From Selaginella moellendorffii (Eukaryota; Plantae; Lycopodiophyta): a DNA stretch of 64,000 bases. The notes under the pieces are model-generated. The model ran no database searches and had not been told where the DNA came from. It saw only the letters and a list, made by a program, of their open reading frames with translations. Positions 4,649 to 62,600 of the stretch are shown here, one piece after another. Made by a program: the position numbers and the translations under genes. The stretch spans positions 2,293,072 to 2,357,071 of the forward strand of contig NW_003314276.1 of the NCBI RefSeq assembly GCF_000143415.4. The letters are read 5' to 3'. The first letter of the stretch is position 1; each line of letters opens with the position of its first letter.

Positions 4649-5569
4649 TGTTGCAAATGTGACTTCGGGTATTGAAAGATACTTGTCGGCCAGTCCTTAC
4701 GGGCACTCTTTTCTTACTGCCACGACAGCAGGAGGTCGGTACTGCTGGTTCCCTTTATCAGCCCCTCTTGTCCAAGTGTTAGTAAACTGGACTTAGCATT
4801 TATACTTGGCCGGATGAGCATAAGGAAGGAATTCCTAAGTGTCTATTTAGCCAAGTATACTTAGCCCGGCTTGTTAGTTCTTTTTTGCTCTGTCTTGCAC
4901 TGGCTTGGCAAGAACCCTCGCGTATTAAGACTAATCCCTCAATATCACCGGATGATATCTTATTGTGTCTGCCAAACACCTTCGCTATCACGCCCTTTGT
5001 GTTAGTCTCATTTCGGTCCCAAATGCTATTTATGAAAAGTGTCTAGATTCGCTCATTTGGCATATCTATGGAATGTAGAGGTTGGCTTGAACACAATGGT
5101 GTTCATCCCGTATCCAAATTCACAATCTAGTGCCATTCCATATTTAGTAAGTTTTGAGCTTATCCCAGAGACTAACTCCTGGTACTAAAGGAGGCTTGGG
5201 GTGAAAGCCCAAAGCGTGTGTTCCTTAGGAGGGGGGGGCGGGGGGGGGGGGGTGCTATGTATAGTAGGGATAGTGGTTGGAATGCATGTCCGACCACCTG
5301 AGACATTATTTTGGCTCCCGCTAGGTTGTGTTACTCCTTATTCTACGTTCGGCTTGGGTCTAAGCCCAAGCTCCATGCTGCTTTAGTCAGTGGGGTACCC
5401 TCCTCCTCACGTTAGGCCACCGGTATGCCAAAATTGTGCCAGACTCCGTCTGACACCATTTTGCGTGCAGGTGCTGGATACGGGGAGCTGGTGCTCGTGG
5501 GATTGTACCGGACCCTCGTTTCGTAGTGCAACGGGCTTGGAGTTTGGCTCCAAATTTAGGTGCACTATA
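4649..5569 (+). repeat. 5' LTR (~920 bp)
   Basis: Starts TGTTGCAAATGTGACTTCGGG and is collinear with 10868-11783. The terminal CA is mutated to TA. Confidence 0.95.
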
Positions 5570-5571
5570 TT

Positions 5572-5582
5572 TGGTATCAGAG
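5572..5582 (+). promoter_or_regulatory. Primer-binding site (tRNA-iMet)
   Basis: TGGTATCAGAG, 2 nt after the 5' LTR. Confidence 0.93.
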
Positions 5583-5739
5583 GAATTGTCTCAGTGATTC
5601 ATATCCAACTTTTGTTAGATTTTCTGACTCAAGTTGCATACGCAGAGACTTTTCTAGTAGATCCAAAGTGACCTGTGTAAGATTAGTTGGATTGCACCAT
5701 TCGGTAAGAACGTTGTATACATGTTCAGTTACTAATAGA

Positions 5740-8700
5740 GGCATGCATGCAGTTAATGAGATGGTGAAATGGAACCGTACTGATGACGCTGAAACCTCTA
5801 GACAGGTGAATCGAGAGGAGGAAACTCCTGCTAGAGAAGCTGCGGAAGAGGCTGAGGCCGAGTCAGAAGAGGAAGAGCCAGATGCTGCAGCGTTGGAGTG
5901 TACGGCTCAGGAAGTCAAGATCGAGAATTTGCAAAGGGAGATTCGCAAATTGAAGAAGGAGAACAAGAAGAGGAAGAAAGAGACTGCTAAGCAACCGGAC
6001 TCCTCTTCAAGTTCTGAGGACGATGAAGTTCTGCAGCCGCCCCTAGTTGCACGAGTTTCAAAGTTCAAGCCTCCGAAACCACCCAATTTCAAAGGCATGC
6101 GGGACTATCAGGTTTTGGAAGACTGGGTTTACGATATGGAAAATTATTTTATAGCGGCAAACGTAGATGATCGTACGAAAGTTGCATACACGCAATCCTT
6201 TCTCACCGATCATGCCAAAACTTGGTGGCGCTAGATGTGTGCTGAAAAAGGGCAGACTAGAAGTTGGACCAAGATGCAGTCTTGTATCCGTAAGGAATAC
6301 TTGCTGGATGATCTTGGTCTAAGACTTCGCACGGAGTTGCGACGGTTAAAGCAGCGAGGGGACCTTATGCATTACATTAATGCGTTTTCTCATAAGCGCA
6401 TTATGATTGCAAATATAAGTGACAAAGATGCTCGGAGTTATTTTCTGGAGGGTTTAAGTTCATTTTCTCGCAATGAGATTTTGAAGTTTAAGCCGAAAAC
6501 ATATCTGGAGTGTAAGGAGGCAGCACAGCAAGTTGCCTTTAGTCACTCGCTCATGGAACAATATCAGCAACCAAAGGGTGGAAAGCATGTATCGCCTTGG
6601 GGGCTCACAAGCTACGGTTAACAAAGGTGGTGGTGGTTGGAGACCACCAGCAGCTTCTTCTGGTCCTAGGCCCTCTGTTCCTCCTCTTGGTGGGTACAAG
6701 CAGCAGCAACTTGCAAAACCTACTCCTAGTGGAATGGGTAGTGTGGGTCATTGCTTCCATTGTGGAGAGTTAGGACATAGGTCCTTGGAATGTCCCAACA
6801 AGCATAAGACAAGGTCTCAGGTTAATGTCATGAGGGAAGACGGTGGTGGTGAAGCTGAAGGGGTTGACGAGTTGGTCAATGCAAACTATGAGGAAGAAGA
6901 GGTGAGTAACTTTCATCACTTTCTTCAAGCTTTTCTTGCAGTCAATGCAAACACTGATCCGTTGATGTATTTGGTAGGGTTTGTCTGTGGATACCGAATC
7001 CGAGTGATGATTGACACGGGAGCTACGCACAGTTTGATATCCGAAGACTTAGTTAAGTTGTTAGGATTGAATGCTGAGCAAATATCGCCTATGCACTTCT
7101 GGTTTGCAGAAGGTGTTCCAATAAAGATATCCAAGTGGAAAGAAAGAGTGGACTTGGTAGTGTTGAAGATATCAGATTTTCAGATGGTGTTTAGTATAGA
7201 ATTCTTCAACAAATATGTAAAAGGGATTTATGGTGCTGGACAAAGTCATATCACATTGAAGTCAGAAGGATGTCCTGATGTGTCCTTCTAGTTGCAAAAG
7301 CGCTCCTCAAAGGATTGGGATGCTAAGTTCCTGACTGCAAGAGCCACTCAAGAAGCAGCTAAGAAGGGATGTCAGACCTTTTGGGTTCAAGTGATGGAAG
7401 CTGAAGGTATTGGTGACTCAGTTTGAATTGGTGACGGGGTTGATTCTATACCAAAGAAGATATTGGAGTTGTTAGCGAGGAATCAGGATATCTTCCCGAA
7501 GGATTTGCCACTGGGGCTACCTCCTAGCCGTGAGGTTGATCATCAGATTGAGGTTATTCCGGGTTCTAAACCACTTATGAAGGCTCTATATCGATTGAAC
7601 ATCAAGGAGATGGCTGAACTCAAGAAGCAACTCACAGAGCTTCTTGACAAAGGTTATATCCGACTAAGTAAGTCACCTTATGGAGCGTCGATCCTTTTTG
7701 TTATGAAAAAGGATGGAACCATGAGGATGTGTATTGACTATCAGGCACTCAACAAGATTACGGTTAAAAACAGTTATCTTTTGCCATGCATTGATGACTT
7801 GTTTGACCAACTCTTAAAGGCTAAGTATTTTATGCGACTTGATTTGCGATCCGGATATCATCAGATACGGGTGGCGAATCAAGATGTGGAGAAGACAGCC
7901 TTTAAAACTCGGTACGGATCTTATGAGTTCCTTGTCATGTTGTTCGGGTTATGCAATGCTCCAGCAACGTTCAGCACTATGATGGATAGAATATTCGGAG
8001 ATTATTTGGACGCATTTGTTATCCTATATATCGATGATGTTCTAATCTTTAGTGAAACGTTGGAGGATCATTTGAAACACTTGGAGCTGGTGTTTCAGAA
8101 GTTGCGCGAACACAAACTGTATGCTAAGGAAAGTAAATGCACTTTTGGTCAATTGCGCGTAAAGTTTCTCGGACATATAGTTGGTGGTGGCGTGATTGAG
8201 GTCGATCCAAAGAAGGTGGAAGCGGTGAAGTCCTAGGAAGTCTTGACCATTGTATCAAATGTTCGTTCCTTTCTCGGTTTGGTGGGATACTATTGCAAGT
8301 TTGTCTGCAATTTTGCAAGAATTGCTCTTCTGTTGACTGAGTTGACGAAGAGTAGTATTCCGTTTCATTGGACACCAGCTTGTCAGTGTGCTTTTGCATG
8401 GTTGAAGGAGATCTTGACTACAGTTCCTGTTCTCAGGATCCCAGATCTTGATAAACCCTTCGAAGTGCATTGTGATGCGTCTGGCTATGCTATCGGTGCC
8501 ATATTGCAGCAAGATTGTGACAAAGCAGTTGGTGTTACACTAAGGCGACATGGTTGTCTCATTGCATTCTATTCCAAAAAATTGGATGAAACTCAATGAA
8601 AATGGCCAACGCATGGGAAAGAGATGTTTGCTATAGTGTCAGTCCTGGAACACTGGAGACACTACTTGGGTAGACATACCAAGGTTTATACGGATAGTAA

Positions 8701-10352
8701 CACACTGAGCTACTTTGCTATGCAGCCTAAGCTTACGCCAAAGCAGGCTCGTTGGCAAGAGAAGCTTGCTAGATATGATATTGAAATCATATATAAACCT
8801 AGTAAAGACAATATTGTCCCGGATGCATTGAGTCGCCAGGCTCAGTTCCGGGCAATATCAGCAATCAGTTCAGACTAATTAGAGGACATTCAGGCTTCAT
8901 ATGGAAGTGATCCATTGGCGAAGGCAATCTTATGCCGTGCGGGGTTGCTAAAGCAGAGCCCTGGTAGCAAAGCAGCAAAAGTTGCAAGTCACACTAATGC
9001 AAAGCTTCACTTCTCAATTTGGGATGGGCTTATATTCTATAAGCAAGAAAGATTGTATCTTCCCTCTAAGGATCTGCAGCAGTTATTTCTGCAGGAACAT
9101 CATGATTTTCCAGTAGCGGGACATGGTGGGAAGCAAAAGACTCTGGCTTCATTGAAAAAGGGATTTTTCTGGTCTGGTATGGAAGGTGATGTAGCGAACT
9201 ATATCCGTTCCTGCCCTATATGCCAGTAATGTAAGTGCAAAACTAAGAAGCAGGCTGGAAAGTTGTAATGCATTCCAGCACTGGCATGGCCATTTCAGAG
9301 TGTAACACTTAATTTCATCACTTCCTTGCCAAAGTCTAAGGGTTATGATACTTTGATGGTGGTTGTGGATCGGTTGTCAAAGATTGCACACTTCATTCCA
9401 ACTGTGGGAACAGTAAATGCAAAACAAGCAGCAAAGCTCTTTTTCCATGAAGTAATGCGGGTTCGTGGTCTTCCTGAAGAGATGATCTCGGATAGAGATT
9501 CGAGGTTTACGGGGAAATTTTGGGGCACACTGTTCCAGCTGTTTGGTACCATGTTGAAATTTAGTACGGCTTATCATCCTCAAATCGATGGGCAGACCGA
9601 ATGCGTGAATGCTCAAGTTGAGGATTATCTGTAGTACTATGTTGCAGCGGACCAACGCGACTAGGTTGAGCATTTGGATACAGCAAAAATTTGTTATAAC
9701 AACACATTTCACAGCACTATTGGTTGTTCTCCATGGGAGATGCTGCAAGGAAATGCTCGCGGAGTGCCTTAACAAATTGTTGTACCGAAACCAATATCCA
9801 AAGTGTTGGTCCCGGCCGTTGAGACTATGCCAAGGTTGGTCTAGAGCTATTGAGGCGATGGGCAAAGCTCAAGATAGGTATCGACGTGATAAGGATCAAC
9901 ATTGTCGGGATGTATCCTATCAAGTGGGAGATCCTATATGGCTATCTTCCCGAAACTTGAACATTAAGAGATCTTTGTCTCGGAAGTTGTTACCGAGATA
10001 TGTTGGACCCTATCGGGTGTTGAGGCGCATTGGTAATATATCCTATCAGTTGGATCTTCCTGCAGAGATGTCCAATATTCATAATGTATTTCATGCCAAT
10101 CTCTTGGCTCCATACACTATGGATGATGCATGTCAAGTGGAGATTAGTCCACCACTAGTAGTTGTGGATGGTGAACCTGAATATGAAGTGGAAGCTATTT
10201 TGGGTACACGTTGGCTTAAACGTGCCAAATGTCGAGAGTATCCAGTTAAGTGGAAAGGTTACCCATCTTGTGAATCAACTTGGGAGCCTCTTAGGAATCT
10301 TACCTATGCTCATAAGCTTGTCACGGAGTATGAGAATCATAATAAAGATTAG
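5740..10352 (+). pseudogene. gag-pol polyprotein with multiple stops and frameshifts
   Basis: Retrotrans_gag-like region, CCHC knuckle (CFHCGELGHRSLEC), protease (IDTGATHS), RT (LDLRSGYHQ, YIDD), RNase H (CDASGYAIG), integrase (GHGG...CPICQ, SDRDSRF), and a C-terminal chromodomain (EYEVEAIL...VKWKGY...STWEP). Confidence 0.96.
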
Positions 10353-16078: not shown

Positions 16079-17101
16079 TCACATTTGGCCTAAGGTCTTG
16101 ATGTTCCACGGCTCGATGTAGTTCCAGTCGCCCTCCCAGAAGTTTTTGGCCAGGATGGAGTATGCAAACTCGGTGGGATGAGTGAAATCCCAGAAGAGAT
16201 ACTGGCTGGGATTATCGCACACCCCTTGCGGGTCATGAGTGGCGAGCCAGCCGCCACACTTTCCACAGCACGCGTGAGCCGTGTCGTAGAGGCCGTAGGC
16301 GGAGGCGTTGGACATGATCTCGGTCATGGCGTTGAAGCCTTTAGCGTAGGAGATTCGCACCCCTGGAAGCCTCATCACCAGCTCGCGAACCAGCATCTTG
16401 AGCGCCAAGTTGAAAGCGCCCGCGATCTCGTTGACGAGGTTGAAGCAGGAGCCGTGGAGGATCCGGCGCACCATGGGAGTGCATCCCAGCGGGCCCAAGT
16501 TGAAGACCACGATCCGGCGAGCGCCGTTCCGGTAGAGCTGGATCAAGTTCTTGCGGTAGATGCTCATCAGCGTGGACAAGAAGTGTCGCCGGTTGGCCGC
16601 TGCCTGGAACAAGTTCGCGAAGATGTCGTTGCTCCCGGCGGTGATCATGAAGAGCGAGTTCCGGAACATGATGGAGGCGTGGTAGTCACCGTTTTGCTGC
16701 CGCACGACGGTCGAGAGGTACTGGAACTGGTCCATCTGTGCGTCGAGCGAGAGGACCCCGAGCGGTGCGTCGGTGGCGTTGAGCAGGCCGCTGCCAGCCG
16801 ACGCAAAGTTTGCACCGTGGATGAAGCTCGCCCCCGGCTGCATGAAGGGTGGAATGTATGGTAGTCCCAGGAACTCGGCGATGAAGTCCGCTATCAGCCT
16901 GCCATCGCTAAACCTTCCTGTTGGCACTCCGAAGGACGTCGTTCCGTAAGGCGTGACGTTGGCAACCGCCAGCGAGCCAGGCAGGAAGTTGTTGTTGCCG
17001 GTGTCGAAGATTGAGTCGCCAAACAGGAAGAGCATTTGCACTTGACTGGCGGAGGCGAGTGTGAGGACCTGGAGGAAAACCAAAGCTTTCAGGTGAGCCA
17101 T
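16079..17101 (-). CDS. GDSL esterase/lipase, secreted, intronless
   Basis: Signal peptide, FGDSIFDTGNN, GRFSDGR, GANFASAG, GSND and FWDFTHPT (catalytic Ser, Asp, His). Confidence 0.97.
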   Translation of the reverse strand: MAHLKALVFLQVLTLASASQVQMLFLFGDSIFDTGNNNFLPGSLAVANVTPYGTTSFGVPTGRFSDGRLIADFIAEFLGLPYIPPFMQPGASFIHGANFASAGSGLLNATDAPLGVLSLDAQMDQFQYLSTVVRQQNGDYHASIMFRNSLFMITAGSNDIFANLFQAAANRRHFLSTLMSIYRKNLIQLYRNGARRIVVFNLGPLGCTPMVRRILHGSCFNLVNEIAGAFNLALKMLVRELVMRLPGVRISYAKGFNAMTEIMSNASAYGLYDTAHACCGKCGGWLATHDPQGVCDNPSQYLFWDFTHPTEFAYSILAKNFWEGDWNYIEPWNIKTLGQM

Positions 17102-30345: not shown

Positions 30346-31438
30346 ATGGCGGCGACCAAATTGTGGCTTCCAGCTCCAGCTCCAGCTTTCGGATTCTTCT
30401 ACTCATCACTGGTACGTTTTCGTCTTTCGTCTTTGCTGGCAAGGGATGGAGTGGACTTTTTCTGTTTCATCTTTTTCTACTCTTTTCACTGTGTGTTTTA
30501 GCGACAGAGAAGAAATGTCTTCATCATGCGAGCAGCCGATGGGAAGGTTCGAAATGCAAAGCTTGCTGCGAAGCGGTGTTTGACGGTCCCGTTCCAAGAT
30601 TCGTCCAGGCTCAATCAGTTTCTCTCGGAGCCCGCTGGAATGCAAATACTCATCAACACTAATGCTTTACAAAGCTATCAGAAACTCGACGACACCACCT
30701 ACAGGTTTGCTATCCATATTCATGAATAGCTCTCAAGTTGTTTTTGTTCTTTTTGTTTTCTCGATCAGATGCTGCTTGCCAAAGCTCGACATTCTCAAGT
30801 TCGAGGTTGCTCCGATCGTGGATTTGTCCATCGACGTTAAGGACGACGAGTGCTTGGTTAAGCTTCTCTCTTGCAAAGTTGAGGCCAAAGTTTTTTTTCT
30901 TTTTTCTTTTCGTTTCTCTTCGCAAGTTTGGGCCTGACATTTGTGAATTTGTTTTGTCTAGTTTGAAGGCTCGGAGCTTGTTGAGAAGCAGAACCAGCAT
31001 TTCTCAGGTTTGTATGCGTAGCTACTAGCTCCTATGGACTGAAGGAAAGTTTGTCTTTATGTGTGGGTTTTTGCAGCTTCGATGATCAACCATTTAACTT
31101 GGGGCTTGGAAAAGCAGCTGAATGTCAATGTAGAGCTTAATGTGTCTCTCGAGGTGCGCTTGATGATATTCTCCATTGATCTAACTCTCTGTGTTTCTTT
31201 CAGGTGTATACGCTGCCCTTCACGCTTCTTCCATTGCAAGCCGTGGAAACTCCCGGTAGCATGTAAGCTATCCTCTTCTCATGCAAAGATTTCAGACTAA
31301 ATCTACGTGTCTGTGATTTTTTCCAGAGTTCTTCAGGCCATGGTGGACAGACTTGTTCCCATTTTCCTGGACCAACTTTTCGATGGTTACAGGAAATGGT
31401 GCTTGCAAGAGGTTCTCCAGCCCGAGCCAAGCCAATAA
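30346..31438 (+). CDS. DUF1997-family (SRPBCC-like) protein, probably plastid-targeted, ~7 exons
   Basis: The spliced reading gives INTNALQSYQKLDDTTYR/CCLPKLDILKFEVAPIVDL...LLSCK/FEGSELVEKQNQHFS/ASMINHLTW.../VYTLPFTLLPLQAVETPG/VLQAMVDRLVPIFLDQL. Introns are short GT-AG type. Confidence 0.82.
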
Positions 31439-31479
31439 CAAAGAAAGAATCGTTCCACCAAAACAAAAGATAATAAAAG

Positions 31480-31960
31480 GTGATGCTCTTTGGTGAATGT
31501 AGTGATATTCCATTGAGCTCTGCATTTCTCGGGAATCATGTCTTAGATCTGGAGAGAGCAGTGGTGCGAATCTCCAGCCAGGAGAGCTACCCAATTGCGT
31601 CCGATTACGCCCCTCTCCTCCACGAGGCCAGGTCCGTCTTCGACAAGACGGAGAGGAATCTCTTCTTGTCTCGCGCTTGCAGTGTACAGGGAGATGCTCC
31701 CCAGATCCATCCAGCCGATCGACAGCACCACGTCTGCTCGGCGCTGGGCGGATTGCCATGTACTCCATAAGCTCAAGAGTGCTTTCTTTGCAAAGATATC
31801 GTCGTCGTCGTATGATCTCTTTTATGCCCAGCACGGGCATAGCAAGCAGGCACTCTCGCTCTTTAGTTCCACCGATGCTGTGACGCTTGCAAGCCTCGGC
31901 GTGCAGCCACTTGGGACACGTGAAGCACACTTCCTGTCGAGTGTGCACAACTTTGGCGAG
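31480..31960 (+). pseudogene. PPR pseudogene fragment
   Basis: FLGNHVLDL, LLHEARSVFDKTERNLF and YAQHGHSKQALSLF occur in different frames. Confidence 0.75.
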
Positions 31961-47940: not shown

Positions 47941-48224
47941 AGTCTATTTTGTAAGTGTTATTTACAACCTTTTAACATCTGTATTGGTTTCTGGACCATT
48001 GAGAGGCAATGTCCTCTTTGATCCATGAACTCCATCCTTCTGTCACCTCATTGTTTAGCAGTTTCACATGACATTTGACTTTTTAACGTTGAGAAAGTCA
48101 GCGAGTCATCCGGAACTGACCGTGTTTATCCTTATAAGACGCGGTCAATCCCGCACTCAGCACATCAAAGTTCACACAAAAGCTTCTGCAAGTTTCTCTA
48201 GGCAAGTCTAAAAAAGTTCTAAAG

Positions 48225-48539
48225 ATGGCGAGGAACAAGATGCTGCTGGCGATGTTTGTGGTGCTCCTGGTGGGAGTTGACATTGGAGGAATTGCAAGCG
48301 CGAGCGCCCAGGGGCGATGCAAGCCAGGGTGGCACTGGGATGGGAAGACGTGCGTCTCTTGCCCACCCCGCTGGTACTGGTACAACAATTCTTGCCAGCG
48401 ATATCGATGCCCGCACAATTGGTACTGATACTTGGGTTCTTGCCACCGCTGCCCGACCAACTGGTATTGGTATGGGAACTCTTGCCACCACTGCCAGATG
48501 GGCTGGCGCTGGATTGGAAGTTTCTGCAAGAAGAATTGA
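48225..48539 (+). pseudogene. Secreted Cys/Trp repeat peptide paralogue B (5 units, in-frame TGA at 48426-48428)
   Basis: Signal peptide nearly identical to copy A. After the TGG>TGA stop the frame continues YLGSCHRCPTNWYWYGNSCHHCQMGWRWIGSFCKKN*. Confidence 0.88.
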
Positions 48540-49125
48540 AGTTGCCCATCAAGATCCAAGCTTATATAAGACTAGCACTTGCCCAGCATATGCTGCCCAA
48601 TTAGCAAAATACTTTTTTTTATATTAAAAAATAAATTGGAATAGTATAAAAAAAACAAATTGTGTTCCACTTTGAAAGAAGAATTTGATAATATAAATAT
48701 TTAGAACAAAATATATTCCTAGGCATAAGTAAGAAGAAATATCCATTAATAAAAATAATAGATAAAAATTATTATTTGGAAATATAAATATATTTATAAA
48801 AATACCCAACCCAGAAAAAGTAAAAATAAAATTTCTATTATTATAATATGTTATATGTAAATTATATTTTTAGTTGGGATAAACTTAAATTAAAATTTTA
48901 TCAAATAGAAGAGAATAATTACTAAGAATAATTATTACTCATTTTTATTAGCAAGACATTACTTAATTATAGTTTTTACTTAGAATATAAAACAATAAGT
49001 TTACATTAATATATTACTACCCAGATCTTGTCATGAAAATAATTACTAAAAAATACTTTGTAAATATATATGCTATAGAAACTGTAATTCCATAGTATTA
49101 TGTACTATTATTAGGTTTTGAATTT

Positions 49126-51310
49126 ATGTTACAGGTTTCAAGAACCCTAATGGGGCGAGCACTTCACTCGCAGAAAATGAAGAGAAAGATGCCAGCTCAT
49201 CCACCCCAGTGCCTCAGATACATCATATACCATATTCCTAGGCTTCCCAGCAACGACACAACCACCTGGCTCAAGGACCATGGATTCGAGCTCCTCCACA
49301 AGGCCTTTTCAACACACCCAGACCAAAAACTGGCAAGGAAATTGGCTGCCTCCTTCAACCCCAAGAACAGCACCATAACCGATGGCACCAACGAGATCAC
49401 CCTCAGCCCAGCAAGAATCGCCTTTGTTTTCAAAATCTCCAACAAGGGACTGCTCAAATTTTCAGGAGAAGTTCCACAGCAAATCATCAAGGCCAATCGA
49501 GAAATTACCAGTGAGCTCACATGGGAGGACATCCAGGAGCAGCATATGGATTGCCTCAAAGCCCTCCTCCTCTACTACGAACTTTGCCCAACAGACCGCA
49601 CCATCGGCAAGCGCACAGCAGAAGTCTACGGAGCTCTACTCGATGGCAAACGTGTGAACGTGGCTCATCATCTCCACAAGCTCCTTCTCAAGCTTCTCGA
49701 CTGTGCCATCCTCGCCACACTCAACCAGAAGACCATGCGGACAGTAATCTTCCCAATGCTGATTGCTCTACACCAAGCCCTTCCCAACAAGCAACCGTGG
49801 ACAACCCAAACAAACTCCACAGAACAAAGTGACAGCTCTGAAGAACACTTAGAATCAGAAGGAGCAACTCCCAGCAAAAAACTGAAGCCAGCATCTCAAC
49901 AATAAGGCTCAACTCACTCCAACAACACCAGCTCCAGCAACAAACACTCCAACAATTCAACTCCACTTCGCTGCCACCTCACACACAAAACACCAACGAA
50001 TCCAGCTCCAAAACCGCTGATCCAAGAGCACCTTGTCATCAGCGACAATGAAGACAACTCACACCACCATCCACACTCACCCCAGAGCCCACATCCACTC
50101 GAATCAGCCCCAAAACCGACAACTTCTCCTACATCGCCAAAGGAAAACGTCAGCTGCTCGCCCAGAACTCAGTTTCTCCACCAGCTGAGAACAACATTCT
50201 CACCGCCCCAACCTCCTTGACACGTTCCACAAAAGAAAACATTGACTACCTTCGCCAATCACTTGAAGAACACACAACCATGCCTCCTCCAGCAAATACC
50301 ACGACCAGCATTAACAAAAATTCCGCCCTTTCAACAAAATTCCAAGCGAAAAATTTCCCAACGGATAAATTAATTTCAGTGCCACATCTGGGCCGTTCAT
50401 CCACCATCAAACTGAAAAGCTCATGTCCAACCACCTCAAAGAATCCGGACCGACCACATCACCCACATCCAACAAAGCAGATTCAACCTCCAGCAACTTC
50501 AACTCCCGGGACCAAGAACACAGCGAACCCTAGCGGGAACCACCAGGATCACGGAGCAGGAGCAGGAGCAGCAGCCATGCCTCAGCCACAGAGTCAGGTA
50601 TGCCGTGATTACAATGAAATCAGGAAGGAGTACGAAGATAAACTCTGTGACCCAAGCTACTGCACCCGCAAGTTGTTTGAAGCCCTTGATCAACGCATGC
50701 ACCGCGAGCAAGCAAACCACCTCCCAACACCAGCCGATATCGCATAGCATCTTCTCAAGCAAGACTCCTTCATATACACCCGAAGAGCTATCAAGAAGGA
50801 GTTCTATGAGCCTTTAAACCACTGGCTGGATACTTAGCTCGAAGAGATGAAGCAGGTACGCACTGGGGACATTAGGAAGATTGTCTCCAAGAAGCCATCA
50901 ACCCCATCAGCAGCTCATGAATTCACCTACAAATTCAAATACGAATAGCTCAACACCTGCTACCGGAAGCTCGAGGATGATCATACCGCCCTCCTGGCTG
51001 AGGTAGCCGACCTCCAGGAAGATGGGACAGAGCCACCAGACGGTGTCCCCAACCACGAGCTTACACTCCCACAGCAAAAACGTCGCCTCTATCGACTGGA
51101 GCAGCAGCAACAACAAGCGATGGAGACAAACTATGTTCGCACTGAGGACGGTGTTTAGTTCTGTCAGGGGAGCAGAGTGTATCAACAAAAAACCTAAACT
51201 CAGGGGATTTTGACCTTGAACCCAAGGCTGCATTGGAGCCATAGATTAACTGCTAGCATATACTATATGCTGTGCATAATTTAGAACCGCTAACTTTTCA
51301 AAGGGGGGAA
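49126..51310 (+). mobile_element. Degenerate TE-associated ORF region (unassigned; retroelement accessory-ORF-like)
   Basis: A 259-aa ORF plus broken low-complexity and coiled-coil ORFs, with strong A/C strand skew and a PPT-like aaaggggggaa at ~51300. Confidence 0.4.
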
Positions 51311-51469
51311 TCCAAATTGTGGATCCCTATCTCCATTCTATCATTTTTCTTATCAATACTCAGCATTTTCTTACTCATGCTTCTTCTCAGCCCTTGGAGA
51401 TCGGGCCCTTTTTTCTTTTGTTTTCTTACTAATAGTAGATTTCCAGCGAAAAGGAGTTTTCACACCTCT

Positions 51470-52298
51470 TCAAGTGCTTGCTTGCTATGCCTGTGCTGGG
51501 GATACGAGGAGATCATAGGATTCCAGATATCCTCCTTCACATGACGATATATTTGCGAAGAACACATCAACGCAAGCGAAGCACTCTTGAGCTTCTGACC
51601 AAAGGTCCACACTTGGAGTACATGGTGCCAAGCAAGCACTCAACACGTGGTGCTGTCGATCGCCTGGATGGATCTGGGGAGCACCGAGATCTCGATGCTC
51701 GTTCCGAGCATATGCTGCGATCATGATGCTCCACGAGAAGAGATTCCTCTCCGGGGTCATGTCGAAGATGGATCTGGCCTCATCGAGGCGGAGGAGAGGG
51801 GCATAACCGGATGGAATTGCGCAGCTCTCCTGGCTGGAAATTCGCTCAATTGATCTCTCCAGATCTAGTTGATGGAATATAGCTTCATTTGCAATTTATT
51901 TTGGCTTTTGTTTCACACTAGATGATGTTTTCTTTGTTATTGACTTGGCTCGGGCTGAACAATCTTTGCATGAGAAGAGGATAGCTTACATGCTACCTGG
52001 AGTTTCACAGCTTGTAAATGGAAGAAGCGTGAAGGGCAGCATATACACCTGGAAAAGAGAAAGAAACATAGAGAGTTAGATCAATGGAGAATGTCATCAA
52101 GCGCACTTTGAGCCACACATTGAGCTCTACATTGACATTTAGCTGCTTTTCCAAGCCCCAAGTTAAATGGTTTATCATCGAAGCTGCAAAATCCCACACA
52201 TAAAGACAAACTTTCCTTCAGTACATAGGAGATAGTAGCTACGCACACAAACCTGAGAAATACTGGTTTTGCTTCTCAACAAGCTCCGAGCCCTCAAG
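51470..52298 (-). pseudogene. Inverted duplicate of ~30965-31860 (DUF1997 3' exons plus PPR fragment)
   Basis: ASMINHLTWGLEKQLNVNVELNV and PERNLFSWSIMIAAYARN on the minus strand. Confidence 0.85.
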
Positions 52299-52399
52299 AC
52301 GATAAAAAAAACCTGGCTCTGGCTTCCTTGGTGCTGCATGAACCTACATACATTTATTTGTTACCAAGAAAATGAGAAAATAAATCTAAAATCTTAGAA

Positions 52400-52730
52400 C
52401 ATACTCACCAAAGGTGAATCTCCCACCATTTGTAGAACGAGACTCCAATGTAGCAGGATGTCTTTTTAGTGTATTTCTGCACAAGATCATAAAGGCAGTA
52501 AACCTTTAGAATGAGTGTGATGGTCTTTTGGCTCCTGGGATCTAGTTTCTGCCAAGTTGCATTTGAAATGTGAGCATACACTGTACAGATGAAGACCCTC
52601 AAGTGCCCCAACCGAGGGTGCTTCCCAGGCAGGTCAGTTTTTATTAGAGTACAATTGAGTTGCTCTGCCAGACCGTTCTACTGGGGAGTATAGGATGTTG
52701 TAATGATGCAATTGACTTGAATTACCTCAA
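52400..52730 (-). mobile_element. Ty1/copia integrase/SH3 fragment
   Basis: TSYTPQ*NGLAE and HLRVFICTVYAHI...KLDPRSQK. Confidence 0.75.
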
Positions 52731-53031
52731 ACAATGGCTGGCCTTGTCCAGAGATGAATCTCTCTTGTAGTAATGCCTTCTGTTGCGATCATAGAGGGCA
52801 TCTTGGCTGGAAGCAATATGCACGTGGAATCCTTCCCGAGCACACAATCTACGCCACTTCCCCTTTTTTAACCTTTCATAGCACTTTCAAAACAAAGTTT
52901 TTATGATTTAAGCCTTACTTCGTGTCACCTGAGGAGCCTCTCTCACCCCATTTCTTCTCCCAATAAGTTTGCGATTTTATTTAAATCAGATTTAAAATCA
53001 TAGGACAATTCATTTTGTGCCTCCAATTTTG

Positions 53032-53205
53032 TTAGTTCTTGATGCAGTGGCCCTTGCTCCATTTCCAGCCAAACTGGCATTGGTGGCACTTCTTGTTGTA
53101 CCAGTACCAGTTGCCTGGGCAACTCACGCATTTGCTTCCACTCCACTTCCATCCGGAGAGGCATTGGTGGCAATCGCTGCTATACCAGTACCAGCCTTTG
53201 GGACA
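53032..53205 (-). pseudogene. Cys/Trp repeat peptide paralogue C (4 divergent units, no signal peptide)
   Basis: CPKGWYWYSSDCHQ CLSGWKWSGSKCVS CPGNWYWYNKKCHQ CQFGWKWSKGHCIKN*. Open frame, but the N-terminus is unrelated sequence. Confidence 0.75.
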
Positions 53206-53718
53206 CTGGATGGAGGATTTGAGGCTGAGTCTAACACTGCTATGTACACGATTTTTACTGCTTCTCGGGCACGATATGTCGTGTTTGTGCTTCATTGACG
53301 GTCAATAAACAAGTGTACGACTTTATCCAAATGAACAACCTCGAGTTTCGATGTGAAATTATCAAAAATATCCATAAAAATGTCTATCTATCTAATTGCG
53401 ACCAATCACTATTTTATATGAATATAAATTGAGTTGCTAACTGGCTCATATGCATTCAAAAATATGGTAATGTTTTTAAAAGTGAACGCACTTATTGAGT
53501 GACACGTATGTGGTGGAGAAAAGGCCTCAAGCTTCTAAACATTCCGAAAAAATTTATGAAATATTAGAAAATGAAACTCAAGCAGCAAGGCAGGATGAAA
53601 TCTCTTCTGATTTTGTTGTGAGGAAATTGGACTTAGAATGGGACGACACAGTTTATTTACCAAAAGGTTATTACAATTGGCTATTATACAAGTTTCAGCA
53701 TGGATCTTGATGGACAAT

Positions 53719-54021
53719 TCAGCCCTTATAGAACCTTCCAGTCCAGCGCCAGCCCCTTTTCGCATCTGTGGCAACCGATGCCATACCAGTACCAACAGAG
53801 CAGCGGTGGCAAGAACATGGTATTCCAGAACCAGTACTCCGGGCATCGGTGGCAGGAATTGTTGTACCCCAGTGCCACCCCGACTTGCATNNNNNNNNNN
53901 NNNNNNNNNNNNNNNNNNNNNNNNNNNNNNNNNNNNNNNNNNNNNNNNNNNNNNNNNNNNNNNNNNNNNNNNNNNNNNNNNNNNNNNNNNACCGCCTCAC
54001 GCTCTTCTTGTTGCTCGCCAG
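53719..54021 (-). pseudogene. Cys/Trp repeat peptide paralogue D (frameshifted, ATG>CTG, spans N gap)
   Basis: CKSGWHW, YNNSCHRCP, WYWYG and GWRWTGRF occur in shifting frames. ctggcgagcaacaag corresponds to atggcgagcaacaag of copy A. Confidence 0.75.
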
Positions 54022-54569
54022 TTTCTTAAAACTCTCCTCTTGCCTCTGTCTCGACTTGCAAACGATAAGAAACTTTGAGAAACTCGAAGCTTGAAGTGTT
54101 GGATGGGAGGATTTACAGTTCTAGGCGGTGACCACGTCTTACAGTGACCACGTTTAGTTCAGGGCTACTCATTGACAATATCTACGTTAAAAAGTAAAAT
54201 GTGAAGCTGTGATACAATGCGGCCTTGGCTTGGACTGGGTACTGATTGATCCAGATTTGGTCCTCGCGTTTGAGACAACACAATCCTGTGGGGAAGGATG
54301 GAAACCAAGTGAACTAGAAAATTCACGTAAACGTTTCTTGAAGTTTACCTCAAACAATGTCTAAAAGATGCCATAGACACTTCTCTGGTAGCTTCTCTTG
54401 TACTGAAGCCTTCCTTTGTGTTCGGAGTATCTTGGTTGTAAGTAAAAATCAGTCGTAGAATGCAGCTAATTATTCACGCAGGATAAGTTAAATAAATGTT
54501 AAAAAGAAAGAAAGCAGGGCAGTCTGAGGCCAGGAGTTCGAGCCTCACATCTTTCATATACTTTCATAA

Positions 54570-54700
54570 CGAAGCACCACGTCGCGCCCCGAGGGAATGC
54601 ACTCGTCAAAGATGGCCACAGAGAGATCCGTTATCCCGGCGCGCGTATAGGCTCCCATCATAACTGTCCAGGAGATCGTGTTCGGCTGGGGCATAGCGCG
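54570..54700 (-). pseudogene. Single PPR-motif fragment
   Basis: AMPQPNTISWTVMMGAYTRAG...AIFDEC. Confidence 0.65.
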
Positions 54701-55272
54701 GAGCGAAGTAAGACAGCTATGCACACGGTTTTTACTGCGTCTCCGGCACGACAAGTCGTATTTGTGCTTGCTTGACGGGGTCAATCCAAATGAAACAGTC
54801 TCTATTTAAGTCCCGTGAAATCATCAAAAGATAATGGATCTTTGTTTTACCTGAGTTGCTAATGCATTAAAAAATAGGATAACATTTTTACGAACCGTAA
54901 TTTCTTGTTGGGTATTTAAAGTCCACTCAGAAGCAAGAACTAAGAAAAAGTAAACTAAACTAAACTGGCTAAACTAAGAAGCATGGGACTTTAATTCACA
55001 TTTCTCTCTCATCTCTTGTCTACTCAGAGTATGAAACTCAGCAGCGGAAGACTTTGGTATTTCGATAATCTTGCTACTCGAGTTGCTAGAAACTAAAAGT
55101 GAAACTGGCAGCAAGTCTCTCATCAAGCGGATTCTGGATGAGGAAACCGAGCCTTAGAATGGGAAAGAAAAACACACACATTTTATTCACCAAAAGGTTA
55201 TCACAAGAAACAACACAACCACAACATTTATTGTCGTTGACATATTACATGAGCTAATCTTGATAGGCAGCT

Positions 55273-55668
55273 TCAGTTCTTCTTGCAGAAACTTCCGGTC
55301 CAGCGCCAGCCCATCTGGCAGTGGTGGCAAGAGTTGCCATACCAGTACCAGTTGATCGGGCAACGGTGGCAAGAGTTGCCATACCAGTACCAGTTGATCG
55401 GGCAGCGGTGGCAAGAACCCGAGTACCAGTACCAGTTAATCGGGCAGCGGTGGCAAGAACCCGAGTACCAGTACCAGTTGTGCGGGCATTGGTGGCAAGA
55501 ATTGTTGTACCAGTACCAGCTTGGCAGGCAAGAGACGCACTTCTTCCCATCCCAGTGCCACCCCGGCTTGCATCGTCCCTGGGCGCTCGCACTTGCAATT
55601 CCTCCAATGTCAACTCCCACCAGGAGCACCACCACAAGCATCGCCAGCAGCATCTTGTTGCTCGCCAT
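55273..55668 (-). CDS. Intact secreted Cys/Trp/Tyr-rich tandem-repeat peptide (131 aa; 7 C-x10-C units), paralogue A
   Basis: ATG at 55668, hydrophobic signal peptide ending ASA, 42-bp tandem units and TGA at 55273. TATAAA on the minus strand at 55793-55798. Three local paralogues. Confidence 0.88.
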   Translation of the reverse strand: MASNKMLLAMLVVVLLVGVDIGGIASASAQGRCKPGWHWDGKKCVSCLPSWYWYNNSCHQCPHNWYWYSGSCHRCPINWYWYSGSCHRCPINWYWYGNSCHRCPINWYWYGNSCHHCQMGWRWTGSFCKKN

Positions 55669-56379
55669 CTTTTTTAAGAACGCCTCTTGCTTTGATGTGA
55701 TCCCAGACTTGTGAACGAGATCGGAGAAAGCTAGAGAAACTTGGAGGAGCTTGAGTGTGAGCTTTGATGTGCTTGAGTATGGGGTGGGAGGATTTATAGC
55801 GCAGGAGAGCGTGTTATAGTTCCGGATGACTCGCTGACTTTTTCGAAGTTGAAAAGTAAAATGTGAAGCCGTGCAGATACGGATGTAGACCTTCGACCGT
55901 GTCAGGCGCAAAGTCAGACGTTTTGGGTATTTGTGCTTTCATTGTAGTAAAAAACATTAATGTTTTACAACGTCTGGAGTAAAATGGGTTTGCCAAAACA
56001 TAATTCTTGCAAATGCTACGCTTGAGAATCTTTTAGATTCATGACTAATGGGGAATGTTATTGAATGAATTTCTTCCGCTTTTAATAAGCTCAGCTCCCA
56101 GACTGCATTTTACCTGGATTTGCCTGTGCACATAGACAAGGAACTCCATATAAGACAAGCCTTGTCTTCGATCATGAAGGAGTGGAACATCATCTCTATA
56201 ACAAAACTGAATGAGCAAGAGTGCCTTGAAAAAGAAAAAATGAGAGTGTTTGATCACCTAAAGGACCTCCTTGTTTCAGCAAATGCAACCTAGAATAGCA
56301 ACCATCTGCATTAGAAAGACTGATTTGACACGAGGTCTCCCACAGTCATTTTTTAGGAATTTTAGCCCATGAAAATAAA

Positions 56380-59630: not shown

Positions 59631-62600
59631 CTCTCCCCCTCTAGGGAAGATCGACGTCCTCGTCAATGCATACTCGAGTCTAGAATACCGCCAAGGAAAC
59701 AACTCCAGAAAAAGTTCACAGTACTCACACTATGTGAGAAATGCACCAACTTAAATGAGTTAAGGGGCAACCTCTTTGTCTAACGCGGATGTGCTACCAA
59801 CTCAGACACCTTCCGGCTATCGCCGACAAAAAAATGACCAACACAGTTAGCCACCCTTGCTACTCTGGGAGTCACCCAGCTTACAAAAGTGTAATATGCC
59901 TCTGCCTACAGGAACATAGAGAGAGAAGATAAAGGCCCCAACCCTCATGAGCAAAGAAACCAAACCCGTCAGTAAGGTTTAGATAGACTACTGTAAATAG
60001 GCAGTTAGAGTTGTTTACACGGTCACGCCCTTTCAATGAAAAAGGAACATCGATAAAGAGGCAGGTTATGTGACCAATCGACAGTAGCTACCCCATGACT
60101 AGAGATTTCAGTATGCACATGAAGTGCCGAAGCCAGTCTGCGTATATTGGCCCAAACTCAAAGATCAATAGATGGACAATATCAAAGTCATAGACAATGA
60201 TATCTTAGAGACTTATTTATCAGTGAATATATCTTAGATTAGAACACAAAAGTATTCCAAGTAAGTTATCATCCGATAAACCACCAAGATCACAATCATT
60301 GGAAAACATAGGATTCACTATCCAGCAAAATTCAATAGCAAGTATACCATCAAGTACACTCAATGAGAAAACTTAACTACCGAAGATTGTAGATAGTATG
60401 CTAAACAACTTACCAAAGATAACTCAAATAACACAAAGTATCCTTAACCGACAAGCACAATACTCGCGAATGTATCACCCGAAGGAAATAACATCCTAAT
60501 TTATCAGAACTAACTTGAGGAACAATCAACAAAACAGAATAAATGTGGTAAGACCAACAAACACTTAGTCATGCTAACCATCGCATAAGTTAATCTGAAT
60601 AAATCCCGGTCAATAATACTAAGGAACTAGAGTTGCTTAAGTAAGTGTCAACAACGTCCTATCGATATCTTAAACCCAAGAGACTAATCCAGAGCAAACC
60701 ACAAAGAACATGTGGTATTGTGAAAAGCCATAAGCCATCAAAGAGAACAACTAACCATCATGAAAGATCATCAATCATCCCATCAATAGAGAAATGCATA
60801 ATCGTCATCGAAGAAAGAATCCACCATCCCGAAAAATGGCAAATCATTCTAGATCAATAATAATCAAGCAAAACCTTTGACAAGGATAATCAACTATCCT
60901 AGATGATAGTCAATCATCACCAATGACTGCAAGATGCAAAAACTAACTTCAACATCGAAACTAACAAGCCAAAATGCCTTCCCCAACAACTTTTAACAAA
61001 TGGAACAATGAGCACAAACTCAAGGAACCAAAGCTCGAAGAAGCCTATAGCCAAGTTTTGCCAAATAATGATCACAAGTCTCATAGAAGCTAACGTCAAT
61101 GCGAAAGAAGAAATCGTGATGCAACTCACAATATCTTCCTCAACACATCCATAAGCCAAACTTCATAATGCCAAAGCTAATGAAGAGTATGTCTGCATCA
61201 ATCCAAAAGCTAAGCATAACGAAGCTATGCTCAACAAGTGATCATTAAATGATCCTCCATGAATCCATCTACAGCAAGACATAATTCACTTCATAACAAA
61301 CCTAAAAAAAAAAATCATTAATGATCGTTATATCCCGAACTCAAATCCAGCAAGGACTCAACATTCTAATATCGATCACTAACTCTTCCTCTCGTAGAGT
61401 TAGCATAGTCCACGACTAAATCACTTTTCAAGAAAAAGCTAAAGCTCAACCCTCTACTAAATAATCTCGTCTAGAACACAACTAATTCAACTTGCCACTT
61501 AGTTCGTTTGAACATCAACACAATTGCTAACTAGCAAATGCACGAATGCCAACAACACAAAGCTATAGCCAAATCATCAACACTATATTTATCAAGACTA
61601 ATGAAACTCAATATCAATCCTTGGAAGGATATCTCAGTTCACTCAGATCTCAATATCAATAATGTCAATGACAAGGCATCACTTCAATGCCATCAACACC
61701 AAAACAAAGCTAGAAGAAAGCATGAGTGAATCACCACTCAAAACTCTTCAACAACCAAGCTAACCAAAGTCGAAGATACTTTAGTCAGTATCCAAGACCA
61801 ATCCTCCAACAAAACTCAGTTACAGATAACACTTCATCAAGGAGTGATTCACCACGTCCAAGACTCAATGAAATCCAACACTACGGACTAAATGTAACCA
61901 AATGATATCGACAAAGGTAGAGTCGACATGTCAATATGAAAAGCTCATGTAAGTCTAATGACACGATCCTCCACAACACCATCCGGTAAAGCAAGCCCAT
62001 CACTGCTAAATCATCATCAACCAAAGCAAGTGTCAACGGTCCTTGATGAAGTCTACAAGTAATCACTAGTCNNNNNNNNNNNNNNNNNNNNNNNNNNNNN
62101 NNNNNNNNNNNNNNNNNNNNNNNNNNNNNNNNNNNNNNNNNNNNNNNNNNNNNNNNNNNNNNNNNNNNNNNNNNNNNNNNNNNNNNNNNNNNNNNNNNNN
62201 NNNNNNNNNNNNNNNNACTCGAATCCAACTCAACCGCAATAAGCTCACTAATGCATTTAGTCAATAGCTCTGAGCATGCCTTGAAGAGGCTAGCTATGTG
62301 ATCAACACTCAGTCGAAACTAAAGTGAAAACCATGAGATGGATTTATATCGGTACACAACCTCCTCATAAACAAAGCTATAGTATAGGTACCAACATCTT
62401 AACCTTAAACAACCAAGTTGGACATCACCATCCTTAGCCAAGGCACAGGGCCACCAAGACTAAGTCAAGATCAGTGAGAGCTCATTACTCTCGTAGAGTC
62501 TAACGAAATGCAAGGTGCAACCTACCACCAAGCAAAACGCTATAAGAAAGGCATAAGGATCACCTTTCTTAGAAAAGTGCAATGGCCACTTTTCTATACC

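What the first reader, a model, noticed from the sequence alone, without database searches (positions are those of the whole stretch)
48225..55668. Four-copy birth-and-death cluster of the repeat peptide with variable unit number
Seen: four paralogues within ~7.5 kb. A has 7 units and is intact; B is inverted with 5 units and a nonsense codon; C has 4 divergent units and no leader; D is frameshifted. Cys and W-x-W positions are largely kept while loop residues vary, and upstream sequence is shared among A, B and D (e.g. aaaagtaaaatgtgaagc at ~54190 and ~55853). Near-identical internal units in A point to recent 42-bp slippage or unequal crossover. Inference: this pattern is typical of defence or reproductive recognition peptide loci.
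Basis: partly seen in the sequence, partly recalled or inferred. Interest (0 to 1): 0.75.

Follow-up and report, generated by a model that had tools for sequence, protein, structure and literature searches.

The report
Spikemoss tryptophan hairpin-repeat gene cluster
A 7.5-kb stretch of the spikemoss Selaginella moellendorffii holds one intact and three broken copies of an unannotated gene for a small secreted protein made of 14-residue cysteine/tryptophan hairpins. It is a real, modestly interesting lineage-specific gene family whose function is untested.

Summary
There are four paralogues.
- A (55273-55668, minus) is intact: signal peptide plus seven 14-residue units (C-x3-W-x-W-x4-C-x2).
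- B (48225-48539, plus) has five units, a TGA in unit 3 and a 6-nt insertion in a CxxC.
- C (53032-53205, minus) has four divergent units in an open frame but no leader, because it starts at a rearrangement breakpoint.
- D (53719-54021, minus) spans the gap. It has lost its ATG and carries at least four frame-breaking indels.

The gap flanks are collinear with A, which has about 61 nt at that point. D is dead whatever the gap holds.

The copies are not assembly artefacts and show no transposon ends. A's two extra units are near-perfect chimeras of their neighbours, which fits in-register unequal exchange.

A versus B gives dN/dS of about 0.22, so selection was purifying, not diversifying.

The unit is a known kind of cysteine-rich beta-hairpin (TNFR / ephrin-receptor-like). 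It scores below Pfam thresholds. No stand-alone plant relative is annotated.

The model (pLDDT about 90 in the mature part) is one rod of seven hairpins, not a polyprotein.

A role in defence or glycan binding is inference only.

The scan has already noted this family at other loci of the same genome (s1-408315, s1-432136).

The parts
55273..55668 (-). Copy A: intact single-exon gene, 131 aa (signal peptide plus 7 hairpin units, ending KKN-stop)
   Evidence: ORF and translation. The ATG context AAAAAAGATGGCG resembles a plant start site, judged by inspection. AF2 model with 7 hairpins.
55582..55668 (-). A: predicted signal peptide (residues 1-29, with ASA before QG)
   Evidence: Basic n-region, hydrophobic core and A-x-A motif, by inspection. 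Helix 4-30 in the single-sequence model. No signal-peptide predictor was available.
55279..55572 (-). A: seven 42-nt units, C-x3-W-x-W-x4-C-x2
   Evidence: TRF period 42; family D1.
55363..55446 (-). A: units 4 and 5, the two units absent from B and D; chimeras of units 3 and 6
   Evidence: Unit identity matrix and sequences. A4 matches A3 at 39/42 and A5 matches A6 at 40/42. Each is 1 nt from a perfect recombinant.
55793..55798 (-). A: TATAAA box, about 125 nt upstream of the ATG
   Evidence: by inspection. The D equivalent is mutated to TGTAAA (54112-54117).
55227..55232 (-). A: AATAAA, about 40 nt after the stop codon
   Evidence: by inspection.
55852..55869 (.). Upstream 18-mer shared exactly with D (54190-54207)
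   Evidence: 2 exact matches in the window, 0.2 expected.
48225..48539 (+). Copy B: 5-unit pseudogene, 93% identical to A over 306 alignable coding nt
48426..48428 (+). B: premature TGA (Trp to stop in unit 3)
48402..48407 (+). B: 6-nt insertion turning CxxC into CxxxxC
48071..48224 (+). B: promoter and 5'UTR homologous to A's (55669-55864), about 74% identical
53032..53205 (-). Copy C: four divergent units (alternating WYWY and WKWS types) plus Asn-stop; frame open, no leader
   Evidence: 42-53% aa identity to A.
53215..53718 (-). D 3' flank, homologous to A's 3' flank (54716-55272); the homology ends at C's first unit
   Evidence: about 70% over 455 aligned nt, with an 84% block at 53239-53306.
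53719..54021 (-). Copy D: dead pseudogene spanning the assembly gap
   Evidence: ATG to CTG, unit 1/2 fusion, +1, -4 and +1 indels, Cys to Tyr.
53891..53990 (.). Assembly gap inside D's leader; A has about 61 nt at this point
49126..52900 (.). Block of unrelated repeats and transposon fragments separating B from C, D and A
   Evidence: Copia-type integrase fragment at 52405-52611 (PF25597). 51473-52297 repeats 30963-31854. ORFs at 49126-50747 have no Pfam match.

Best explanation
This is a small, lineage-specific gene cluster of Selaginella moellendorffii, evolving by duplication, inversion and decay.

Shown:
- One copy (A) is a complete single-exon gene with a TATA box, a good start context, a signal peptide, seven 14-residue units and AATAAA.
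- Three copies are pseudogenes or relics of different ages. B died recently, D long ago, and C is the oldest and is cut off at a breakpoint.
- The ancestral gene most likely had five units. A gained two by in-register unequal exchange between the near-identical Trp-Tyr-Trp-Tyr cores.

Predicted:
- The mature protein is about 102 residues, with 14 Cys, 14 Trp, 10 Tyr, net charge about +9 and pI about 9.
- It folds as one rigid rod of seven disulfide-braced beta-hairpins. This is the architecture of TNFR / ephrin-receptor-type cysteine-rich repeats. It is not cut into separate peptides.

Inferred:
- It is secreted to the apoplast or cell wall.
- Its stripe of exposed aromatic and basic side chains binds a polysaccharide or microbial surface, giving a defence or wall-associated role. 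I put this function at about 40%.
For: Organism: the neighbouring GDSL lipase ORF is 100% identical to SELMODRAFT_429497.

Anatomy of the four copies.

Real paralogues, not artefacts: A-B coding identity is 93% but their flanks are only 74% identical. D is about 75% identical to A.

Constraint: A versus B gives dN/dS 0.22, p = 0.002.

Unit gain: A4 and A5 are chimeras of their neighbours. B and D each have one unit of each type.

Repeat class:
- Pfam gives only a sub-threshold TNFR_ELAPOR1_6th hit.
- HMMER against 1.8 billion proteins gives 129 hits. One is P0006 (E 5.8e-16), which itself passes PF23091 and PF07699.

Fold:
- The AF2 model built with a 7-sequence alignment has pLDDT 81-92 over most of the mature part (residues 31-120; 77-88 in the last 11), with 14 strands forming 7 hairpins.
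- Every structural neighbour is a cysteine-rich hairpin ladder:
  - mastigoneme MST1: Foldseek prob 1.0, TM 0.50; Z 4.7
  - mGluR cysteine-rich domain: Z 4.2
  - ELAPOR1: Z 3.9, rmsd 1.9 A over 44 residues, 32% identity
  - Eph and TNFR receptors

Cysteine count: each unit has its own pair (C-x10-C), and the single Cys at each end fit seven intra-unit disulfides (inference).
Against:
- A is absent from the protein collections searched.
- Three of the four copies are dead, so the locus may be on its way out.
- Structural Z-scores are low in absolute terms (5 or below).
- Pfam thresholds are not met.
- Disulfide connectivity and any binding activity are untested.
- dN/dS rests on only 20 substitutions.
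Confidence: 0.7

Rival explanations
1. The whole cluster, A included, is a decaying relic. A's open frame is a leftover and the gene is no longer expressed or useful.
For: Three of the four copies are broken. No annotated protein or database entry matches A. The cluster lies among transposon fragments.
Against: A keeps its TATA box, start context, signal peptide, all 14 Cys and 14 Trp, and AATAAA. A-B coding is 93% identical against 74% in the flanks, with dN/dS 0.22. A gained units without losing its frame.
Confidence: 0.15
2. It is a multi-core precursor: the protein is cleaved into seven 14-residue disulfide-cyclised Trp peptides, as in Ib-AMP-type polyproteins.
For: Exact 14-residue periodicity with one Cys pair per unit. 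Unit number varies between copies.
Against: There are no spacers, acidic propeptides or dibasic sites between units, and consecutive units are joined directly through a CxxC. The model is a continuous rod with high confidence. Sequence and fold relatives are non-processed cysteine-rich domains.
Confidence: 0.07
3. The copies are passive cargo of a transposable element, or assembly artefacts around the gap.
For: Transposon fragments lie between B and C. One copy abuts an assembly gap.
Against: No terminal inverted or long direct repeats bracket any copy, and the only repeats found are the genes themselves. The extent of homology differs between pairs: A-B runs from about -200 to +20, while A-D also includes about 550 nt of 3' flank. 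The copies differ by 7-50%, far more than haplotypes or assembly duplicates would. The gap flanks are collinear with A.
Confidence: 0.04
4. The repeated CxxC (often C-H-x-C) motifs bind metal (zinc-ribbon-like or copper-binding) and do not form disulfides.
For: CxxC-x10-CxxC spacing and 8 His in the mature protein.
Against: A signal peptide routes the protein to an oxidising compartment. The single Cys at each end fit seven C-x10-C disulfides but are left over in a paired-CxxC metal scheme (inference). All relatives found are extracellular disulfide-rich domains.
Confidence: 0.04

Closest known systems
TNFR-like / ephrin-receptor-like cysteine-rich repeats (Pfam PF23091 TNFR_ELAPOR1_6th, PF07699 Ephrin_rec_like; also the class C GPCR cysteine-rich domain PF07562)
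   Same: CxxC-(P)-x-x-aromatic-x-aromatic-x3-4-C periodicity. Beta-hairpin ladder braced by disulfides. There is a sequence link through P0006 and a local structural fit to ELAPOR1 (rmsd 1.9 A over 44 residues, 32% identity).
   Different: It falls below the Pfam gathering scores (23.6 versus 33.2 bits; 6.7 versus 23.1). The period is a strict 14 residues with a W-x-W (mostly WYWY) core. It is a stand-alone 102-residue secreted protein, not a module of a large receptor.
Cysteine-rich tandem of the Chlamydomonas mastigoneme protein MST1 (PDB 8wa2, 8tx1; PMC10602792)
   Same: This is the best whole-length structural match (Foldseek prob 1.0, TMq 0.50, rmsd 4.9 A over about 130 columns; VIA Z 4.7). 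It is an extracellular rod with a ladder of regularly spaced disulfides, which its authors liken to the ephrin-receptor cysteine-rich domain.
   Different: MST1 is a filament subunit of about 1,900 residues with Ig domains and a polyproline helix. Sequence identity is only 18-19%. No Trp ladder is reported for it.
Small secreted CxxC/aromatic repeat proteins of the zoopagomycete fungi Dimargaris cristalligena (RKP39162.1) and Dispira simplex (KAJ1652403.1)
   Same: They have the same layout: a signal peptide followed by 5-6 back-to-back units of 13-14 residues, C-H-x-C-x3-[YFH]-[YFW]-W-x3.
   Different: They are only about 29-40% identical, in a low-complexity Cys-rich context. They come from a different kingdom and are uncharacterised. 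Common descent and convergence cannot be told apart here.
S. moellendorffii XP_024531936.1, 'putative pectinesterase 11'
   Same: Its first 49 residues (signal peptide plus first hairpin unit) are 69% identical to A. It is the only annotated Selaginella protein found that carries this module.
   Different: After about one and a half units it continues into an acidic linker and a pectinesterase domain. It may be a chimeric gene model or a real fusion. It is not in this window.
Plant multi-peptide antimicrobial precursors such as Ib-AMP of Impatiens (from my own knowledge, not tested here)
   Same: Basic, Trp- and Cys-rich short units repeated in one secreted precursor.
   Different: Those have conserved spacer propeptides between cores and are processed. 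Here the units abut with no spacer.

Membership tests
TNFR_ELAPOR1_6th / Ephrin_rec_like cysteine-rich repeats (Pfam) | Score at or above the Pfam gathering threshold | tested here: not met
   PF23091 23.6 bits against a cut-off of 33.2. PF07699 6.7 bits against 23.1.
TNFR_ELAPOR1_6th / Ephrin_rec_like cysteine-rich repeats (Pfam) | Significant sequence link to bona fide members | tested here: met
   P0006 is hit at E 5.8e-16 in a 1.8-billion-protein search. It scores 105.6 bits on PF23091 and 74.7 bits on PF07699. Cys-rich composition may inflate the E-value.
TNFR_ELAPOR1_6th / Ephrin_rec_like cysteine-rich repeats (Pfam) | Disulfide-braced beta-hairpin ladder fold | tested here: inconclusive
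   The model has 7 hairpins, with pLDDT 81-92 over most of the mature part. All 28 VIA rows and the top Foldseek rows are of this class, but Z is 4.7 or below. Disulfides were not mapped.
Multi-core (polyprotein) peptide precursor | Spacer propeptides or processing sites between repeated cores | tested here: not met
   The units are contiguous 42-nt blocks joined through CxxC, with no spacers or dibasic sites.
Birth-and-death multigene cluster | Linked paralogues of different ages that include pseudogenes | tested here: met
   Identity to A is 93% of coding nucleotides for B, about 75% of nucleotides for D and 42-53% of amino acids for C. B, C and D are each disabled in a different way.
Birth-and-death multigene cluster | At least one copy kept by purifying selection | tested here: met
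   A versus B gives dN/dS 0.22, p = 0.002. Coding identity is 93% against 74% in the flanks. The sample is small (20 substitutions).
Fast-evolving defence or reproductive recognition peptides | Excess of non-synonymous change (dN/dS above 1) in the mature peptide | tested here: not met
   For the mature region, dN is 0.047 and dS is 0.27.
Transposable-element cargo | Copies bracketed by shared element termini (TIR or LTR) | tested here: not met
   The repeat finder reports only the gene copies themselves. The extents of homology differ between pairs.
Secreted protein | Cleavable N-terminal signal peptide | tested here: inconclusive
   An n/h/c-region with A-S-A before Q is seen by inspection. 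No dedicated predictor was available.

The most novel reading that the evidence does not exclude
Selaginella has an undescribed class of stand-alone secreted 'tryptophan-ladder' proteins. They are rods of 5-7 disulfide-stapled WYWY hairpins that bind microbial or cell-wall glycans. Their length is tuned by unequal exchange of 42-nt units. The same leader-plus-hairpin module has been recruited onto a pectin methylesterase.
Probability: 0.3. Interest if true: 0.55.

Novelty: new variant of a known kind. Interest (0 to 1): 0.4.

Why it matters
Lycophyte secreted cysteine-rich proteins are poorly catalogued, and this family is missing from the annotation. If A is expressed, it would add a plant example of a minimal, stand-alone TNFR / ephrin-type hairpin ladder with an unusually dense aromatic face. 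That would make a compact scaffold for studying glycan or membrane binding. The cluster also shows clearly how repeat number changes by in-register exchange inside a coding sequence. The gain is modest. The repeat type is known, selection is ordinary purifying selection, and the same family has already been flagged elsewhere in this genome.

Tried and rejected
- Word-based protein search with A found no hit.
- ESM Atlas gave no usable hit.
- A PDB sequence search gave only chance-level hits to the first hairpin of C-type lectins, with E above 0.6.
I therefore did no expression check, no haplotype comparison and no genome-wide copy count.
- The bacterial-type promoter and terminator scan does not apply to a plant gene, so I ignored it.
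- Literature searches for Selaginella cysteine-rich or Trp-rich peptides found nothing describing this family.
- I looked for a signal-peptide exon upstream of C. No candidate ORF lies between 53215 and 53700. The sequence before C's first unit ends in a CAG that looks like a splice acceptor, but this was not testable.
- I considered gene conversion between A and B to explain 93% coding against 74% flank identity. It is not required: synonymous p-distance is 0.17 and flank p-distance 0.26, which by my own rough two-proportion estimate (no tool call) do not differ significantly (p about 0.1).
- I looked for A's 3' flank beyond the insertions downstream of B and did not find it.
- Weak Foldseek rows to pneumococcal choline-binding repeats (prob 0.06 or below) were not pursued.
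Full report
**Where this is.** The window is nuclear DNA of the spikemoss Selaginella moellendorffii. The intronless GDSL-lipase ORF at 16079-17101 (-) is 100% identical to SELMODRAFT_429497. The neighbourhood holds PPR genes, an NDC80 homologue, a RING-H2 gene and retrotransposon ORFs. Earlier notes of this scan had named the species; I confirmed it independently.

**The observation.** Translation and tblastn with copy A find exactly four related stretches in the 64 kb and nothing else above chance.

- **Copy A** (55273-55668, -) is an uninterrupted 131-codon ORF. It has a 32-residue leader with a typical signal-peptide shape, then seven units of exactly 42 nt, each C-x3-W-x-W-x4-C-x2, then Asn-stop. 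TRF reports the 42-nt period.
- **Copy B** (48225-48539, +) lies in the opposite orientation. It has five units, a TGA replacing the second Trp of unit 3 (48426-48428), and a 6-nt insertion (48402-48407) that spoils one CxxC.
- **Copy C** (units at 53038-53205, -) has four units that alternate between WYWY and WKWS types. All its Cys and Trp are kept in an open frame, but it has no leader.
- **Copy D** (53719-54021, -) straddles the assembly gap. It carries:
  - CTG in place of ATG;
  - an out-of-frame fusion of units 1 and 2;
  - three further frame-breaking indels;
  - a Cys-to-Tyr change in the last unit.

Over the 16 units of A, B and C, Cys1, Trp5 and Cys12 are invariant. Trp7 is missing only at B's stop.

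**The gap, tested first.** In gene orientation, the sequence before the gap aligns to A's promoter, 5'UTR and about the first ten codons. The sequence after the gap starts at unit 1. Both lie on the same strand and in the right order. A has about 61 nt between these points, and the 100 N are nominal. Continuity is therefore plausible, but the frame cannot be known. This does not affect the verdict on D, which is broken on both sides of the gap.

**Artefact or transposon cargo?** Neither is supported.
- A and B are 93% identical over 306 alignable coding nucleotides but only about 74% in the 5' flank. D is about 75% identical to A in both coding sequence and flanks. C is 42-53% identical at the protein level. 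These distances are far beyond haplotype or assembly duplicates.
- A repeat search finds no terminal repeats around any copy.
- The extent of homology differs between pairs. A-B runs from about 200 nt upstream to about 20 nt downstream of the gene. A-D additionally shares about 550 nt of 3' flank.
- That A-D flank homology ends exactly where C's first unit begins. C therefore lacks a leader because it was truncated at a rearrangement breakpoint.
- About 3.8 kb of unrelated repeats and a copia-type integrase fragment separate B from the others.

**History.** Unit-by-unit comparison shows which units correspond:

| Units compared | Identity |
|---|---|
| A1 and B1 | 95% |
| A2 and B2 | 86% |
| A3 and B3 | 93% |
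| A6 and B4 | 93% |
| A7 and B5 | 95% |

D has the same five-unit set before its internal deletion. Five units is therefore the likely ancestral state.

A's extra units are chimeras. Unit 4 has the 5' part of units 5/6 and a 3' part identical to unit 3. Unit 5 equals unit 6 except for its last codon, which resembles that of unit 4. Each is one nucleotide from a perfect recombinant. Two in-register unequal exchanges or slippage events within the identical TGGTACTGGTA cores explain this. A single 84-nt duplication would give an alternating order, which is not what is seen.

**Selection.** A versus B has 10 synonymous and 10 non-synonymous differences. This gives dN 0.042, dS 0.19 and a ratio of 0.22, with binomial p = 0.002 for an excess of synonymous change. 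B was therefore functional for most of its history and died recently. The family is conserved, not diversifying. The data are few, and this is the only clean pair.

**What the protein is.**
- Pfam gives only sub-threshold hits to TNFR_ELAPOR1_6th and Ephrin_rec_like.
- The word-based search found nothing.
- Full HMMER against 1.84 billion representatives found 129 proteins at E of 0.001 or better. Most of those I inspected are proteins with CxxC-x9-10 repeats; a few of the short low-scoring ones are not Cys-rich.
- Among the hits is P0006, which passes both Pfam models.
- The hits also include small secreted repeat proteins of the fungi Dimargaris and Dispira.
- The only Selaginella hit is XP_024531936.1, annotated as a pectinesterase. 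Its first 49 residues are 69% identical to A's leader and first unit.

**Structure.** AlphaFold with a seven-sequence alignment gives pLDDT 81-92 over most of the mature part (residues 31-120), with fourteen short strands forming seven hairpins. The single-sequence model had the same topology at pLDDT 68.

Structural neighbours are uniformly cysteine-rich hairpin ladders: mastigoneme MST1, the mGluR/CaSR cysteine-rich domain, ELAPOR1, Eph receptors and TNFRs. The Z-scores are low (4.7 or below), which is common for small elongated repeats. The MST1 paper describes a ladder of regularly spaced disulfides and likens the domain to the ephrin-receptor cysteine-rich region.

**How it most likely works.**
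- *Shown:* gene anatomy, repeat architecture, conservation.
- *Predicted:* a secreted rod of about 12.6 kDa with 14 Cys, 14 Trp, 10 Tyr, 8 His, net charge about +9 and pI about 9. The simplest pairing is one disulfide per unit, because every unit carries its own C-x10-C pair and the two terminal Cys are single. A laddered pairing is not excluded.
- *Inferred, about 40%:* the aromatic and basic faces bind polysaccharide or microbial surfaces in the apoplast, giving a defence or cell-wall role.

Processing into 14-residue peptides is unlikely because units abut without spacers. Metal binding by the C-H-x-C motifs is a minor rival.

**Limits.** I had no access to other Selaginella loci or to the second haplotype, no signal-peptide predictor and no model coordinates for checking disulfide geometry.

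The scan has noted the same family at other places in this genome (s1-408315: genes with five or seven hairpins; s1-432136). I could not check those loci, but their description agrees with what I see here.

**Verdict.** The birth-and-death reading and the unit-exchange reading are supported. The defence or reproduction reading is untested, and diversifying selection is not seen. This is a new variant of a known kind of repeat, of moderate interest.

Noticed in passing
not in window (protein P0010 = XP_024531936.1): An annotated S. moellendorffii 'putative pectinesterase 11' begins with a signal peptide plus a first Trp-hairpin unit 69% identical to copy A. It then has an Asp-rich linker and a pectinesterase domain. 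This is either a chimeric gene model or a real fusion of the module to a wall enzyme.
   Followed up: partly
window 51473-52297 and 30963-31854: An inverted pair of a dispersed repeat (up to 91% identity over 338 nt) carries a decayed PPR-like reading frame. A further PPR-like fragment lies at 54554-54784, between D and A.
   Followed up: partly
window 49126-50747: Two long ORFs (259 and 176 aa, + strand) with no Pfam match sit inside the block that separates B from C. They are probably part of an unclassified mobile element.
   Followed up: partly
window 52405-52611 (-): Fragment of a copia-type retrotransposon integrase (SH3-like domain, PF25597).
   Followed up: partly
window 5560-10352 (+): A run of ORFs with gag, protease, reverse-transcriptase and chromodomain-like sequence, apparently a Ty3/gypsy-type retrotransposon (judged by reading the translations only).
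   Followed up: no
window 62072-62216: A second assembly gap, of 145 N.
   Followed up: no
window 53206-53224 (-): The sequence just before C's first unit ends in a pyrimidine-rich tract plus CAG, which looks like a splice acceptor. C could in principle be a 3' exon of an unseen transcript.
   Followed up: partly
proteins P0045, P0112, P0089, P0094 (not in window): Small signal-peptide proteins made of 13-14-residue C-H-x-C / aromatic repeats exist in the zoopagomycete fungi Dimargaris cristalligena and Dispira simplex (P0045, P0112) and in unnamed environmental sequences (P0089, P0094). All are uncharacterised.
   Followed up: partly
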